Part shown: positions 21,752 to 54,702 of the stretch, piece by piece
Numbering within the stretch: the stretch's first letter is position 1
Layout of the letters: every line of letters begins with the position of its first letter
Origin: Octopus bimaculoides
Taxonomy: Eukaryota
DNA: 64,000 nt
Assembly: GCF_001194135.2 (NCBI RefSeq)
Contig: NC_068996.1
Span: 27,778,107 to 27,842,106, forward strand
Direction of reading: 5' to 3'
Position numbers and translations under genes: made by a program
The notes under the pieces: generated by a model
What the model saw: the letters and a program-made list of their open reading frames with translations, nothing else
What the model was told of the DNA's origin: nothing
The model's database searches: none

Positions 21752-21837
21752 AATAAATAATGAATCTATATACAATGAGTTTGCAATGCAAGATTCAGAT
21801 CTCATCGGTGATGTTGACTTTGGTGCTGATATAACTG
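21752..21837 (+). CDS. MAPK8IP3: JIP3/4 exon (INNESIYNEFAMQDSDLIGDVDFGADIT)
   Basis: ttgcag|A...CTG|GTAAGT; phase 2 to 1; matches the family motif NTESLFEELS...LIGDVDEGADL. Confidence 0.95.
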
Positions 21838-22555
21838 GTAAGTAGGTGTTTTGTTAATTAACCTTATTGTTGATGCTAAGGGGCTGATTGATATATTTAT
21901 TATACTTATATATTCTTTTGATGAATATTCTTGAGAAGCTTCGAGGGTGAGAAGGGATGAATGGTGGGGAAAAAATGTAAAACTTAATTTTAAGACAATA
22001 TTTGAATAATATTCAGTTAAGTGTGATGTTAGAATTTTTTTGTTTTGAGCCAGTTATTTTCTTTCTCTGACTCTCTCACTCATGCAGTTCCCAATTTGGG
22101 ATAGTACTTTGGCAGTATGGCTAACAAATTTTAGGATTCTTGATTCTTTGTCACTGTGCAACACATTAGGCAAGTGCTTTTCACAGTGTCTTGTGAATGA
22201 AAATTGGTAGATATAAACTATATAGAAACCTGTCATATTATTTGAATAGGGAATTATATAATGTGTAGTTAACCATTCAATGAGTAGTGATCAATAAAAT
22301 ATAAATTGTGAACTGATATAATTGAGTAATAAGTTTGAATACAGTGCTGAAGCACAGTCTTAGTCCAAGGACTGTAAATTAGTGGAGTGGACAATTATGG
22401 ACCTTTTGGTAATTTCAAGTTAAAATAGCTTTGATATAAATTACTATCAATCAGTAGACACTTATTCAATAGCCTCTGTATACTTCAATCCATATTGCAG
22501 TCAGTGTCTTTTGATTGTTTTTTCTTAAAGTTGACATTCTTACCATTTTATACAG

Positions 22556-22591
22556 GTAGTGCAGTCAATCCTGGAGAATATGCTTCCTCAG
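22556..22591 (+). CDS. MAPK8IP3: 36-nt microexon (GSAVNPGEYASS)
   Basis: ttttatacag|GT...TCAG|GTATTT; phase 1-1, stop-free, GC-richer than its T-rich flanks; GEYAS resembles vertebrate JIP3 GEFS at the same position (recalled). Confidence 0.75.
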
Positions 22592-50075: not shown

Positions 50076-53000
50076 TTCAGTAATTATTTTAGAAGTTAAG
50101 TATTGAAAATAGCTATTCACGTCCATTAATATAATCATATCCAAATAGTCATACAGTACACTAAACCAATCCATAGATCAATGGTTATATCTATATGGAT
50201 ATAAAGACATATATATATACATATGTATGTATGTGTGTGTATATATATATATATATAGATCAAGGTACAAATGAGGATATGAACCTCGGAAGGATAAAAA
50301 TGTCCAAGATTAGACTGGTTTAATGCTTAACAAAGCAGGCACATACATATATAGTATTATTAATATTGTACAAAACAAGAGAGAAGATAGATAGGATTAA
50401 TAAAATTTTATTAGCATTGACAAGACCAGACTTACAATTGTTTGAATTCATTACTTACAGCATAAAAATTAACCAAATATAATTTAACTAAATTAATTTG
50501 GTTAATTACTACAAGTGAGAATATCTTCAGGGAAGGATGCCCAAAGAAATTTATATTTAAAACAGAATGAAAACATAAAACAGGAAGAATGCAGTGTATC
50601 ATCATAGTTAAAAATATAAATACATAGTTATAAAAATAGATACACACACACACATGATTTTCACTTCCATCTTATTATTTGAAATAAATTCTGAAAATTG
50701 TGACCAACAAATTGAATTAAATCAGAGGAAAAACTGATGATATTTCACTTGCATATCCATTAAGCATCTGGACATTAAATAATAACTCCAATTTTCTTGC
50801 AAATTAAGCCATCAATGAGAATTATGTAGATCTGATGAAATCAATCGTAGTATACTTGCAATGTAAAGGAATATTATATATTCTACAGAATAGCTCTCCA
50901 CAACACTTATAATAAGTGTTCTATAATCCTATTAATAAAAGTTTATTACCATGAGGAGCTCATGTCCCCAAGTATTTTGTGATGTCATAATTAAATGTTG
51001 CTTTTTTTTTGTCTCTTCTATGTATTACTTCCTGACAAAACCTTGTCAGGCCTTGTTAGATGTTAATTGAGATCATATAATTAATTAAAAATACATAGCT
51101 TATTCACTTATTTCAGTTTTTAGAAGTTATTTCTTTACCCCCTTCTTTTGGTTGTATTTTTTTATCCCTCTTTATCCCTCTCATTATGTACATATTTATT
51201 CTACTTTCCTTTATCCTCTTCTCTAACATTGAAAATTTATTTATTTACTGTTTTTGTTTATTTTTCATGGGAATGGTGAAGGTGAATAATTGATGTTGTC
51301 ATTATTATTGTTGCACACTTGGCTATGTTCAACAGGGAACAAAATCAGACAAATTCAGTTTGCATGTCTTGCTTTTGCTTACAGTAGACAAACTGTCATG
51401 CATTTATTATAAAACAGCCAACTCCATTGGCCATGACTAACAGATCACCTGAATCACACTTCTCTTTCTTTTACCCTTTTTTGTTTTGTTTATTTGTCTA
51501 AAATTGATTTTTGCTAAATGTGCTATTATTATTGTTATCATTATTAAGAGTGCTTAGTTTTTGGAGTCTTCCAATTATCCCTAATTTTCTGACCCTGCGT
51601 GTGTGTGTGCGTGTGTGTGTGCGTGTGTGTGTGCGTGTGTGTGCGCGTGTGTGCGCGTGTGTGCGCGTGTGNNNNNNNNNNGTGCGTGTGTGTGTGCGTG
51701 TGTGTGTGCGTGTGTGTGCGCGTGTGTGCGCGTGTGTGCGCGTGTGTGCGCGTGTGCGCGTGCGCGCGCGCGCAAATACAGAAATTATCATTTGAATATT
51801 TAATACCAATGCTTATTTTAATTAAATGTTGACAATTTTATTTTCTCTTTTTATTTTTAATGATTAAACAGTTGTTGATTTCCAGTTCAGTGAAAGGATT
51901 TCTCAGTTTTATATTGTCACTTGTAAATAAAACTGTTACTTTTTTTCAATTCAGTGTATTACTAAAATAACACTAGTAAAACCAGGTGTACATAAAACAC
52001 CCATACTAATTATTTTATATATTCAAAACTTAATTTTTCAGTTCTGTGAATTAAACTATTTTAGCTAATATTCTAGATTCTGTTTGTATATATTGTATTA
52101 CTAGGTAATATAAATGTTAGCTGTGAACTTATTTATTGATTAATTCATTCTACAATGTTGTCTAGAAAAATAGTACATGTGTATTGTACAAAATGATTAC
52201 ACATACAGGAGTTATATGTATTTTGTCTTACTGTGAAATTAGGCCCTCCTGTAATAGGTTCACGGAACCATTTCATGTTCATTACTTAACATATGCTTCT
52301 TTGACCTATCGCCAATACATCAAATTATTATCTTTGGAATGATTTGAATTAAAGTATTTGTACAGCTGATTGCCAATTTAACATAATTAGTGATAGAGAG
52401 ATGATAGAAATGTGTGTAATCAACAGCTAAATTTTTTAATGCCTTAAAAATAGGGACCATGTAAGTCGGTGAAAGAGTTCCTATGTAGTCCCATCTGTTT
52501 AGTGTAGTAGTGAAATTTCCCTTTTGAAAACCTCATATCTTTTAAAAATAGGAATTACACTGCCCAGCTTTTATACAAATTAAATAGCCTCAATATAAAG
52601 CACAAATCCTCTATGTAAATTCTCCACTGTCTTGGAAATAGGATCAAGAAATTTTTCAGTTTTCAAATCTTATATCAATATCACTCAATAATGGGAAAAT
52701 ATGAAGAAATTTTAAATATAATTGCTTATGTAATTTGCATAGTTTTACTGTAAACATTATCAATGGCAGATTTAGTTGAGCAGTGGTCAAAATATCTTCT
52801 GGTATCTAGTTGTGTTCCTTTACATTCTAAGTTCAAATTCCTCTAAGGTCAACTGCTCACCCTTCTGAGTATGATAAAATAAGTATCAGTCAAATACTGT
52901 TATTAATATAATTAAATTATAACTCCTTAAATGTTGGAAATTTATAATTTAATATTCATTAATCATTTATGATTTAATATTCATTTTGTTTTCTATTAAA

Positions 53001-54644
53001 AACACTGAGGTTTTATGGTTGACTAATTCCTGTTTTGTTTTAACCCTTTTGCTATCAACCTGCCTAAGATAACCTCTGATGGCTTGATAAAAACCTAGAT
53101 GCAAGTAATCTAAATTAAAACCTTCTGTTTAAATCTCATGTTAATTTATGTTCCAAACTAAGTAATGAGTTAATTTACTAAAATCATTTTCAAAATTAAT
53201 TGTATCATCACATCTTCACCATCTCTTCACTCTCCCACTGAGGTAGCCCTATACCTCCCTCAATGCAAGATACCGATTTCTGTCCCTTTGTTTATACATT
53301 AACCTCTCATCACCTGGCACAAAGCCATCTCCCTCAATACACCTGCCTTCAGTTCAGGGGGGTTTTGTCTTGCAAATAAGTTACTTGGTGGACTTCCCTG
53401 CTGCTAGTGCCACCTAATACACTTTGTAAAGTGGTTGGCATCAGGAAGGGCATCCAGCTGTGAAATCTACTACATTATTTATTATTAGTTATTTGTGAAA
53501 GTAACATTGTTGATAATTTGCAATGAGCCAATCTAGTTCACTATATCTCTGGTGGCAAATGTTAGAAAGATGTTTTGACATTGGTGGACTTTGTTTGAAG
53601 AGCTTTTCCCCCAAAGTTTACATTCTAAACTGGTTGGTTTTTCACTGTGGTTTCCACCATATAACATCAAATCCCAAAGGTGTCACAACACCCTAACTAG
53701 AAACAACTGGTCGTTTTACAAAGCTTGGTGTTATAGTATTTCAGCAGGCCTGGAGCAGATGAACTGAATAGAAAAGAGACGTGGGAGAGTCTAGAGCTGC
53801 CAATGTATTGACACACATCCTTGTAATGCTATGGTCATTATATTCCTTAACCCTTTAGCATTTAAAGCAGTCATATCTGGCTCAAATAGTCTACCTGTTT
53901 TATATTTAAAACTGGTCAGATCTACTTCTCACACTTACCTTAGTGTCATTTTAAAAATAAGCAATGGCATCATCAAACTCTTAAAGCAATAAGATAATGT
54001 TTGATAATTCAAAACAATGTGAATGAATAAGCATTACATTTGATGGCGTAACCTGGATGCGAAAAGGTTATGGATCACTGCACAAGTCAAGCAGAGGAGT
54101 TGCAAAAATTCCAAAATTCTTTCGTTCAGGAATGTTGTGTGATTTAAAGGTTTCAGAGGGGTTTTTTTTCTGAAGAAATAGTTTTATTGTACAAATATAA
54201 GGAAATGGAATATTTTTGTTAAATTTCTTATATCCTTTGCTATCTTTTTCTTCTTTCATTTTTAATGATTTTTTTTTTTACGACCTAAAAAGATTAAAAA
54301 AGTATACACTAAACTCAACAATTGAAGCATATCCTAAATAAAATTAAAACAAATTAGGTGTTAAATAAGTATTTCAAGGTTCTATGTTTTGTTTGGTTGT
54401 ATTTATTTATTCTTTCTAAAATTGTATTTGTTAACATTTTCTTTTCATTGTGTATATCTATGTATGTATGTGTTTATATACTCATGTGTTGGCATGTAAA
54501 GTTAACTCAGATTGAATGTGGATTCTGAAGTTTTTGTTTTGTTTTTGTTAATGTTTTCTGTTCTCTGCAAAGAAACATCTTGCCTCCTTGTCATGCTTTT
54601 ATTTTTTTTTACTTGTAATGTTTTTTTTCTATTATTTATTGCAG

Positions 54645-54702
54645 GTATGGGTAAAGAACTTGAAAACTTGATTCTAGAGAACACTGAATTATTGGCTACT
54701 AA
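54645..54702 (+). CDS. MAPK8IP3: JIP3/4 LZII exon 1 (GMGKELENLILENTELLATK)
   Basis: ttgcag|GT...ACTAA|GTAAGT; phase 1 to 2; family motif GMG(K/R)EVENLILEN. Confidence 0.96.

What the first reader, a model, noticed from the sequence alone, without database searches (positions are those of the whole stretch)
21752..54702. Hidden combinatorial microexon array feeding the LZII (kinesin light chain/ARF6-binding) zipper
The apparent 32.8-kb intron holds frame-preserving phase-1 microexons of 36 nt (22556), 33 nt (29220), 18 nt (46689) and possibly 12 nt (28871). With the three best included, the protein reads DFGADIT-GSAVNPGEYASS-ESDKENDREST-VSDNFF-GMGKELENL, and any subset stays in frame. JIP3 LZII binds KLC, ARF6 and dynactin (established). 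That this cassette tunes motor choice in cephalopod neurons is inference.
Basis: partly seen in the sequence, partly recalled or inferred. Interest (0 to 1): 0.85.

Follow-up and report, generated by a model that had tools for sequence, protein, structure and literature searches.

The report
Conserved microexon cassettes before JIP3 zipper
The long intron of this JIP3/Sunday-driver motor-adaptor gene holds three small in-frame exons just before the motor-binding zipper: two are ancient and already known from flies and vertebrates, one looks lineage-specific, and the proposed 12-base fourth exon is a chance match.

Summary
The window carries a JIP3/JIP4 (Sunday driver/UNC-16) orthologue on the + strand. 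All four candidates sit at the stated coordinates, and all eight subsets of the three best are open in frame.

- **36-nt exon (22556-22591, GSAVNPGEYASS):** real coding sequence. It matches GSWVHPGEYASS in insects, crustacean-like transcripts and nematodes.
- **18-nt exon (46689-46706, VSDNFF):** real coding sequence. It matches VNDN[FY]F in arthropods and a bivalve, and VRDDFF in vertebrate JIP3. Two distant genomes keep it with only synonymous changes.
- **33-nt exon (29220-29252, ESDKENDREST):** probable, not proven. It has no deep homologue, but it lies inside a 195-nt run of perfect identity with a relative whose surrounding intron is about 76% identical.
- **12-nt candidate (28871):** rejected. 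The relative has lost its acceptor AG and differs at 3 of 12 bases.

Both assembly gaps are intronic and interrupt no exon.

Alternative, combinatorial use in this species was not shown. It is inferred from isoforms seen in other taxa. An 18-nt neural microexon next to LZII in fly syd was described in a 2026 preprint. This is therefore a new member of a known kind. Any effect on motor choice remains speculation.

The parts
19554..19656 (+). Probable upstream exon of the same gene (..IIPNTPELDEPAEALSQANAANKKNVK). It joins in frame to the exon at 21752.
   Evidence: tttcag/gtatgt borders. IIPNTPELD matches IIESTPELD of vertebrate JIP4-type transcript P0025.
21752..21837 (+). Constitutive-looking exon ending ..DFGADIT, donor in phase 1.
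   Evidence: Aligns to JIP3 8pr2_B residues 384-412. 92% identical to Logan contigs L001/L002, where only the exon aligns.
22556..22591 (+). 36-nt phase 1-1 cassette exon, peptide (G)SAVNPGEYASS. Ancient.
   Evidence: Homologous to GSWVHPGEYASS (moth, cockroach), GGWVHPGEFASS (crustacean-like) and GGFVNPNEYAS (nematode). Orthologue-only profile: unique hit in the window, E=1e-4. tblastn from 11 orthologues. Splice-score rank 4 of 993.
28871..28882 (+). 12-nt candidate (ACSK). Rejected as a chance match.
   Evidence: In relative L003 the acceptor AG is AT and 3 of 12 bases differ. Rank 44 of 993. No homologue.
29093..29287 (.). 195-nt block of perfect identity with a relative, enclosing the 33-nt exon.
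   Evidence: L003/L004 alignment: identity 98.5% across the wider 263-column block 29058-29320, against 76% over the other 1426 columns. No Rfam family. No unusual RNA fold, z=0.25.
29130..29143 (+). Tandem UGCAUG UGCAUG (Rbfox-type motif) 84-91 nt upstream of the 33-nt exon, inside the perfect block.
   Evidence: The regulatory role is inferred.
29220..29252 (+). 33-nt phase 1-1 acidic cassette exon, peptide ESDKENDREST. Probable and lineage-restricted.
   Evidence: Sits inside the perfect block. Donor CTG|gtatgt scores 7.7. 108-nt AG-free zone upstream with a displaced pyrimidine tract. Acidic cassettes occur at the same junction in crustacean-like transcripts. Weak acceptor score, rank 39 of 993.
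45685..45825 (.). Assembly gap (141 N). Intronic, 864 nt upstream of the 18-nt exon.
   Evidence: Flanks are unrelated unique sequence.
46646..46798 (.). Conserved block around the 18-nt exon: perfect runs of 87 and 61 nt.
   Evidence: L007-L009 alignment, overall identity 78%.
46689..46706 (+). 18-nt phase 1-1 microexon, peptide VSDNFF. Ancient, and abuts LZII.
   Evidence: Matches VNDN[FY]F in arthropods and a bivalve, and VRDDFF in JIP3 chain 8pr2_B. Found in L010/L011 with cag|..|gtaagat borders and 3 of 18 changes, all synonymous. UGC at -12 and a 262-nt AG-free zone. Rank 2 of 993.
51672..51681 (.). Assembly gap (10 N) inside a (GTGTGC)n-type repeat. Intronic.
54645..54702 (+). First LZII exon (GMGKELENLILENTELLATK).
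   Evidence: Pfam JIP_LZII, 112 bits. PDB 6ejn, 2w83 and 8pr2. L010/L011: 12 of 58 changes, all synonymous.
56521..56577 (+). LZII exon (NALNVVKDDLIAKVDELT), the region that binds KLC in the homologue.
   Evidence: KLC contact residues from PMC6224480.
57860..58007 (+). Exon continuing the LZII coiled coil.
59156..59346 (+). RH2 exon (..[39 protein letters not shown]..).

Best explanation
The 32.8-kb interval between the ..DFGADIT exon and the first LZII exon of this JIP3/Sunday-driver orthologue holds a row of three symmetric (phase 1-1) cassette exons.

- Two are old. The 36-nt and 18-nt exons date at least to the common ancestor of molluscs, arthropods and nematodes. The 18-nt exon also has a vertebrate counterpart.
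- The 33-nt acidic exon is restricted to this lineage as far as can be seen.
- Each donor ends in G and each cassette is a multiple of three. Any subset therefore splices in frame, and each cassette adds a fixed peptide module to the disordered linker that runs straight into LZII.

Inferred, not shown:
- The cassettes are alternatively included, mainly in neurons. The 18-nt exon has the UGC-near-acceptor signature of eMIC/Srrm-dependent microexons. The 33-nt exon has conserved UGCAUG motifs upstream.
- The added motifs (W/Y-containing ..PGEYASS, an acidic stretch, DNFF) change how the LZII region engages its partners.
For: **Gene identity.** Pfam JIP_LZII. PDB JIP3/JIP4 chains.

**36-nt and 18-nt exons.**
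- Alignment A1 to orthologues and the motif census.
- Orthologue-only profile search of the window.
- tblastn.
- The vertebrate JIP3 chain 8pr2_B reads [21 protein letters not shown].
- L010/L011 keep the 18-nt exon with only synonymous changes.
- An 87-nt perfect run surrounds it in L007-L009.

**33-nt exon.**
- A 195-nt perfect run in L003/L004.
- In each of the two alignments the longest perfect run is the one that covers the candidate. My rough estimate of that happening by chance is about 0.1 per alignment.

**Alternative use elsewhere.**
- Crustacean-like transcripts with near-identical upstream sequence show 36+18, acidic+18 and acidic only (P0100, P0073, P0023). P0008 skips everything.
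- Vertebrate JIP3-type sequences show none (P0028), +GEFS (P0045) and +GEFS+VRDDFF (8pr2_B).
- The fly syd 18-nt microexon next to LZII is neural-enriched, and its deletion has a phenotype (preprint).

**Motifs.**
Against: - No transcript of this species or any close relative could be reached. Inclusion, skipping and tissue bias are therefore untested here.
- Splice-site scores do not separate the candidates from decoys.
- With the close relative, many decoy AG..GT pairs are also retained, including overlapping ones inside the conserved blocks such as 29224-29256. The exact borders of the 33-nt exon therefore rest on donor quality and peptide plausibility.
- The 33-nt acceptor has a poor local pyrimidine tract.
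- UGCAUG occurs about once per 1.2 kb in this intron, so single motifs mean little.
- No cross-species DNA was obtained for the 36-nt exon.
- The known KLC2 contacts start about 16 residues into LZII, and the crystal constructs lack the cassette residues. Nothing ties the cassettes to partner binding.
Confidence: 0.7

Rival explanations
1. The small exons are real but constitutive in this species. They would be ordinary short exons that a sequence-only reader overlooked, not a combinatorial switch.
For: Predicted insect proteins carry both the 36- and 18-type peptides together (P0006, P0026). Both exons have good splice sites. No data on skipping in this species.
Against: - The orthologous positions are variably included in crustacean-like transcripts and in vertebrate JIP3-type sequences. 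The fly 18-nt exon is tissue-regulated.
- Long perfectly conserved intronic flanks, very long AG-free zones and a UGC near the acceptor are typical of regulated exons.
Confidence: 0.2
2. The conserved block at 29093-29287 is not an exon. It would be an intronic regulatory element, such as a splicing enhancer/silencer acting on neighbouring exons or a transcriptional enhancer. Only two cassettes would then exist.
For: - No homologue of ESDKENDREST in any orthologue outside the close relative.
- Weak acceptor score, rank 39 of 993.
- Conservation extends well beyond the 33 nt and includes tandem UGCAUG.
- Other open AG..GT pairs exist inside the block.
Against: - The block contains an open, frame-preserving exon with a good donor, directly after a 108-nt AG-free zone.
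- The peptide is acidic and hydrophilic like the surrounding linker.
- Acidic cassettes occur at exactly this junction in other lineages.
- No RNA family and no special fold.
Confidence: 0.25
3. All the candidates are chance AG..ORF..GT matches in a long AT-rich intron.
For: 993 such candidates on the + strand and 871 on the reverse strand, with similar top scores. This is the right reading for the 12-nt candidate, which loses its AG in the relative.
Against: - For the 36- and 18-nt exons: sequence homology from nematodes to vertebrates, in the correct order, strand and phase.
- Only synonymous changes to the 18-nt exon in distant genomes.
- Local conservation peaks at the 33- and 18-nt exons.
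Confidence: 0.02

Closest known systems
18-nt neural microexon of Drosophila sunday driver (syd), next to LZII (bioRxiv 10.64898/2026.09.05.749416)
   Same: Same gene family, same length and same position directly before LZII. That preprint offers the same speculation about kinesin-1, dynein-dynactin and ARF6. Insect orthologues in my alignment carry VNDN[FY]F where the window has VSDNFF.
   Different: - I did not have the fly exon sequence itself. Homology was shown through moth, cockroach, crustacean-like, bivalve and vertebrate sequences.
- The preprint treats events outside flies as independent or convergent. The peptide conservation found here (V-x-D-[ND]-[FY]-F from mollusc to vertebrate) argues for common descent of the coding exon.
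- Neural specificity was not tested here.
Vertebrate JIP3 (MAPK8IP3) LZII-proximal inserts GEFS and VRDDFF
   Same: Same junction (GADLL | GMGKEV). Inserts of 4 and 6 residues appear in three combinations: none (P0028), +GEFS (P0045) and +GEFS+VRDDFF (PDB 8pr2_B). VRDDFF aligns to VSDNFF.
   Different: - Vertebrates have a 4-residue insert where protostomes have the 12-residue GSxV[HN]PGEYASS. Whether GEFS is a remnant of ..GEYAS is only a guess.
- No 33-nt acidic cassette is seen.
- The zebrafish mapk8ip3 microexon that was deleted with mild effects (PMC12626420) could not be placed relative to LZII.
Cassette array at the same junction in crustacean-like marine transcripts (P0002-P0009, P0023, P0073, P0100, P0107)
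   Same: A 36-type exon, an acidic cassette and an 18-type exon are used in several combinations before GMGKE.
   Different: Their acidic cassettes (DSGSEGGDIDSFDN, DDEDERNSYRSFDN and others) are not alignable to ESDKENDREST. In the isoforms seen they replace rather than join the 36-type exon. The taxa are unnamed.
C. elegans unc-16/JIP3 84-nt neuron-type-specific cassette (UNC-75/EXC-7/PRP-40)
   Same: Same gene family. A regulated cassette exon whose inclusion differs between neuron types (PMC8378409).
   Different: Different size. Its position relative to LZII was not established here. Nematode transcripts in my set carry the 36- and 18-type peptides in addition.

Membership tests
JIP3/JIP4 (Sunday driver, UNC-16) adaptor gene | Leucine zipper II domain (Pfam PF16471 JIP_LZII) | tested here: met
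   112 bits against a cut-off of 30, residues 57-127 of the spliced peptide.
JIP3/JIP4 (Sunday driver, UNC-16) adaptor gene | RH2 segment following LZII | tested here: met
   [39 protein letters not shown] is identical to JIP3 chain 8pr2_B over this stretch.
JIP3/JIP4 (Sunday driver, UNC-16) adaptor gene | N-terminal RH1-LZI and C-terminal WD40 domains | not tested
   They lie outside the window or in upstream exons not reconstructed here.
Orthologue of the LZII-adjacent 18-nt microexon (fly syd, vertebrate JIP3 VRDDFF) | 18 nt, frame-preserving, directly before GMGKE of LZII, peptide V-x-D-[ND]-[FY]-F | tested here: met
   Kept in L010/L011 with synonymous changes only.
Orthologue of the LZII-adjacent 18-nt microexon (fly syd, vertebrate JIP3 VRDDFF) | Neural-enriched inclusion | not testable with these tools
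   No RNA-seq or transcripts of this species or a close relative could be reached.
eMIC/Srrm-dependent neural microexons | Length 3-27 nt (up to 51 nt in broad definitions), multiple of three | tested here: met
   18 nt meets the strict definition. 33 and 36 nt meet only the broad one.
eMIC/Srrm-dependent neural microexons | UGC motif close to the acceptor with the pyrimidine tract upstream of it | tested here: inconclusive
   Met for the 18-nt exon in the window (UGC at -12) and in L010/L011 (a UGC 12-15 nt before the acceptor). Not met for the 36- and 33-nt exons, whose nearest UGC is at -60 and -59.
eMIC/Srrm-dependent neural microexons | Strong conservation of flanking intron | tested here: met
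   33-nt exon: 195-nt perfect run. 18-nt exon: 87- and 61-nt perfect runs. Not obtained for the 36-nt exon.
Rbfox-regulated cassette exons | (U)GCAUG within about 300 nt of the exon, conserved | tested here: inconclusive
   Tandem UGCAUG at -91 and -84 of the 33-nt exon inside the perfect block, and one at +93 of the 36-nt exon. The motif occurs 28 times in the 32.8-kb intron, so chance is not excluded.

The most novel reading that the evidence does not exclude
The cassette row before LZII is a bilaterian-ancestral modular 'linker code'. The 36-nt and 18-nt exons would descend from exons already present in the protostome-deuterostome ancestor, with vertebrate GEFS and VRDDFF as their remnants. 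That would contradict the convergent-origin reading of this splicing hotspot. Lineages would then add their own acidic cassettes, here the 33-nt exon. The combinations would set which motor or GTPase partner the LZII region engages in different neurons.
Probability: 0.3. Interest if true: 0.6.

Novelty: new member of a known kind. Interest (0 to 1): 0.4.

Why it matters
JIP3 adaptors couple kinesin-1 and dynein to axonal cargo, and MAPK8IP3 variants cause a human neurodevelopmental disorder.

- A conserved set of tiny exons placed directly before the partner-binding zipper is a plausible control point for transport. Deleting the fly counterpart already gives a phenotype.
- The window adds a mollusc-type locus in which all cassettes can be placed on the genome. 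That supplies exact junctions to look for in RNA-seq data; the preprint cited includes Octopus bimaculoides tissue data.
- The peptide conservation suggests the 18-nt exon, and probably the 36-nt exon, are inherited rather than repeatedly invented.
- It also shows that gene models which skip such exons lose conserved protein sequence.

Tried and rejected
**Searches that led nowhere**
- Looking for transcripts of this species or a near relative with the spliced peptide: only one genomic read-through ORF came back.
- Exact look-ups of window ORFs over or beside the 36- and 18-nt exons: nothing on record. No cross-species DNA was obtained for the 36-nt exon.
- Rfam scan of the whole window: no family. 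Folding of the conserved block: not unusual.
- Naming the organism through SRR accessions in papers and through cluster names: no taxon obtained.

**Arguments tested and dropped**
- Splice-site scoring as a discriminator: dropped, because the reverse strand scores as well.
- 'Splice sites retained in the relative' as a test: dropped, because 15 of 38 and 17 of 26 decoys are retained too. Only the local conservation peaks are informative.

**Comparisons set aside**
- JSAP1a-d isoforms: these involve exons 5 and 6 near the JNK-binding region, a different site.
- The L009 row of alignment A2 used wrong coordinates and was ignored.
- Readings of the cassette peptides as FFAT-like or W/Y-acidic KLC motifs: considered from memory only and not pursued. 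The sequences fit those consensus motifs poorly.

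
Full report
**1. What is at the coordinates**

The + strand of the window encodes a JIP3/JIP4 (Sunday driver, UNC-16) orthologue.
- Exon 21752-21837 reads ..INNESIYNEFAMQDSDLIGDVDFGADIT and ends in phase 1.
- Exon 54645-54702 reads GMGKELENLILENTELLATK.
- Further LZII/RH2 exons follow at 56521-56577, 57860-58007 and 59156-59346.
- The spliced peptide hits Pfam JIP_LZII at 112 bits, against a cut-off of 30.
- It aligns to the JIP3 and JIP4 chains 8pr2_B, 6ejn_C, 2w83_C and 4pxj_A.

All four candidates have the stated lengths, AG/GT borders and phase. 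Every donor ends in G. The junction codon therefore depends only on the downstream exon, and all eight subsets of the three main cassettes are open in frame.

**2. The assembly gaps**

The gaps 45685-45825 and 51672-51681 are both inside the intron.
- No claimed exon touches a gap. The 18-nt exon starts 864 nt after the first one.
- The 10-N gap lies within a (GTGTGC)n-type repeat that continues on both sides. The 141-N gap has unrelated unique flanks.
- Reading frame across the gaps does not matter, because the frame is carried by splicing.
- Three things stay uncertain: the true intron length, whether an exon hides in the 141-N gap, and the scaffolding of the 5.8-kb piece between the gaps.
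- That piece carries the 18-nt exon in the orientation and order that orthologous proteins require, which supports its placement.

**3. Is it more than chance?**

Splice sites alone do not show it.
- The intron contains 993 AG..GT-bounded, frame-preserving, stop-free candidates of 9-60 nt.
- With a crude consensus matrix the 18-nt exon ranks 2nd, the 36-nt 4th, the 33-nt 39th and the 12-nt 44th.
- The reverse strand yields 871 candidates with equally high top scores.

The case therefore rests on homology and conservation.

**4. The 36-nt and 18-nt exons are ancient coding sequence**

A search with the spliced region returned 320 JIP3-family proteins. In the alignment and the motif census:
- GSAVNPGEYASS matches GSWVHPGEYASS (the moth Chilo, the cockroach Diploptera), GGWVHPGEFASS (unnamed crustacean-like marine transcripts), and GGFVNPNEYAS and GQFVNPSDYAS (nematode-like transcripts).
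- VSDNFF matches VNDNYF and VNDNFF in the same arthropods, and VNDNFF in the bivalve Mercenaria.
- In the JIP3 chain 8pr2_B the junction reads [21 protein letters not shown].

A profile built only from the orthologue peptides finds the 36-nt exon as the single good hit in the six-frame translation of the whole window (E=1e-4; next best 0.71). The profile for the 18-nt exon also ranks it first, but marginally (E=0.15).

Two 20-kb loci from other assemblies (L010, L011) align to the window only in exons, so they are distant relatives.
- They carry cag|TCAGTGACAACTTCTTCG|gtaagat 2.6-2.9 kb upstream of their LZII exon.
- That differs from the window at 3 of 18 bases, all synonymous.
- Their LZII exon differs at 12 of 58 bases, all synonymous.

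In a closer relative (L007-L009, overall 78% identity) the longest perfect run, 87 nt, covers the 18-nt exon with its acceptor region and donor.

**5. The 33-nt exon is probable, the 12-nt exon is not**

No orthologue outside a close relative has ESDKENDREST. Contigs L003 and L004 from that relative align to 28703-30870.
- A 195-nt run of perfect identity (29093-29287) encloses the exon.
- Identity is 98.5% across the wider conserved block 29058-29320, against 76% over the rest of the alignment.
- The next longest perfect runs are 59 and 46 nt, and they are adjacent.
- The block matches no RNA family and folds no better than shuffled sequence.
- The exon has a good donor (CTG|gtatgt), a 108-nt AG-free zone upstream with the pyrimidine tract displaced to about -40 to -25, and two UGCAUG motifs at -91 and -84 inside the block.

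Caveats:
- With so close a relative, many decoy AG..GT pairs are also retained, including overlapping ones in the block. The exact borders are therefore an inference.
- A non-exonic regulatory element remains a live rival.

The 12-nt candidate fails. In L003 its acceptor AG is AT and 3 of 12 bases differ.

**6. Alternative and combinatorial use**

This was not testable here. No transcript of this species or a near relative is in the reachable collections.

The indirect evidence is good. Crustacean-like transcripts with near-identical upstream sequence show:
- 36-type plus 18-type (P0100);
- acidic cassette plus 18-type (P0073);
- acidic cassette alone (P0023).

Other transcripts skip everything (P0008) or carry only the 18-type (P0014). 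Vertebrate JIP3-type sequences show no insert (P0028), GEFS (P0045) and GEFS+VRDDFF (8pr2_B).

- Its deletion causes age-dependent hyperactivity and fewer offspring.
- It calls syd/SPAG9/MAPK8IP3 a hotspot of neural tissue-specific splicing.
- Its data set includes Octopus bimaculoides.
- It treats events outside flies as convergent. The peptide conservation found here argues instead that at least the coding exon is inherited.

**7. How it most likely works**

Shown: three phase 1-1 modules can be spliced in any subset. They lie in the disordered linker that runs directly into LZII. The Pfam match starts at the last F of VSDNFF.

Inferred:
- Neuron-biased inclusion. The 18-nt exon has the UGC-near-acceptor arrangement typical of eMIC/Srrm-dependent microexons in the window and in L010/L011. 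The 33-nt exon may respond to Rbfox-type factors.
- A functional effect on LZII partners has no support here. The KLC2-JIP3 and ARF6-JIP4 crystal constructs begin at GMGKE/GMGRE, and KLC2 contacts begin about 16 residues later (PMC6224480).

**8. Organism**

No named cephalopod sequence was recovered. The best named match is Mercenaria JIP3-like. The AT-rich sequence with a 33-kb intron and microsatellites is compatible with a cephalopod, but 'cephalopod' stays unverified.

**9. Verdict**

The novelty is limited, because the same microexon position is already described in flies and is visible in vertebrate JIP3. Two modestly new points come out of this work: the lineage-restricted 33-nt acidic cassette, and the argument for deep homology of the 36- and 18-nt exons.

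Noticed in passing
window 19554-19656 (+): Probable exon of the same gene (tttcag|...|gtatgt) reading LDRTPNAIIPNTPELDEPAEALSQANAANKKNVK. The IIPNTPELD stretch resembles IIESTPELD of a vertebrate JIP4-type transcript, and the exon joins in frame to the exon at 21752.
   Followed up: partly
window 4235-4708 and 9039-9494 (+): Two long hydrophilic open frames (158 and 152 aa), rich in S, T, E and K. They look like large disordered-region exons of the same gene. The second ends just before the N gap at 9558-9629.
   Followed up: no
window 51590-51760: A (GTGTGC)n-type microsatellite spans the 10-N gap. GT/CA and TA repeats also occur at the window start and next to the 9558-9629 gap.
   Followed up: partly
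window 49973-49981 (+): The best-scoring frame-preserving candidate on the crude splice matrix is a 9-nt element (AYS, score 20.5). It has no homology support and no comparative data.
   Followed up: no
window 29224-29256 (+): An overlapping alternative AG..GT pair, shifted by 4 nt, is also open and frame-preserving (VIRKMTESLLV) inside the perfectly conserved block. Its donor (gtttct) is poor, so the 29220-29252 reading is preferred, but it is not excluded.
   Followed up: partly
L010 11669-12399; L011 11623-13502: Retroelement open frames (RNase_H, RVT_1) on the opposite strand, in the intron downstream of the LZII exon in two distant relatives.
   Followed up: no
A1 rows P0097, P0105, P0108; also P0118: A group of unnamed transcripts has a long acidic insert (..SHNESDRATSEPEGEHEKESENDSIAYTS-MEKEF..) at the same junction. 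It has no recognisable 36- or 18-type peptide and a divergent start of LZII.
   Followed up: no
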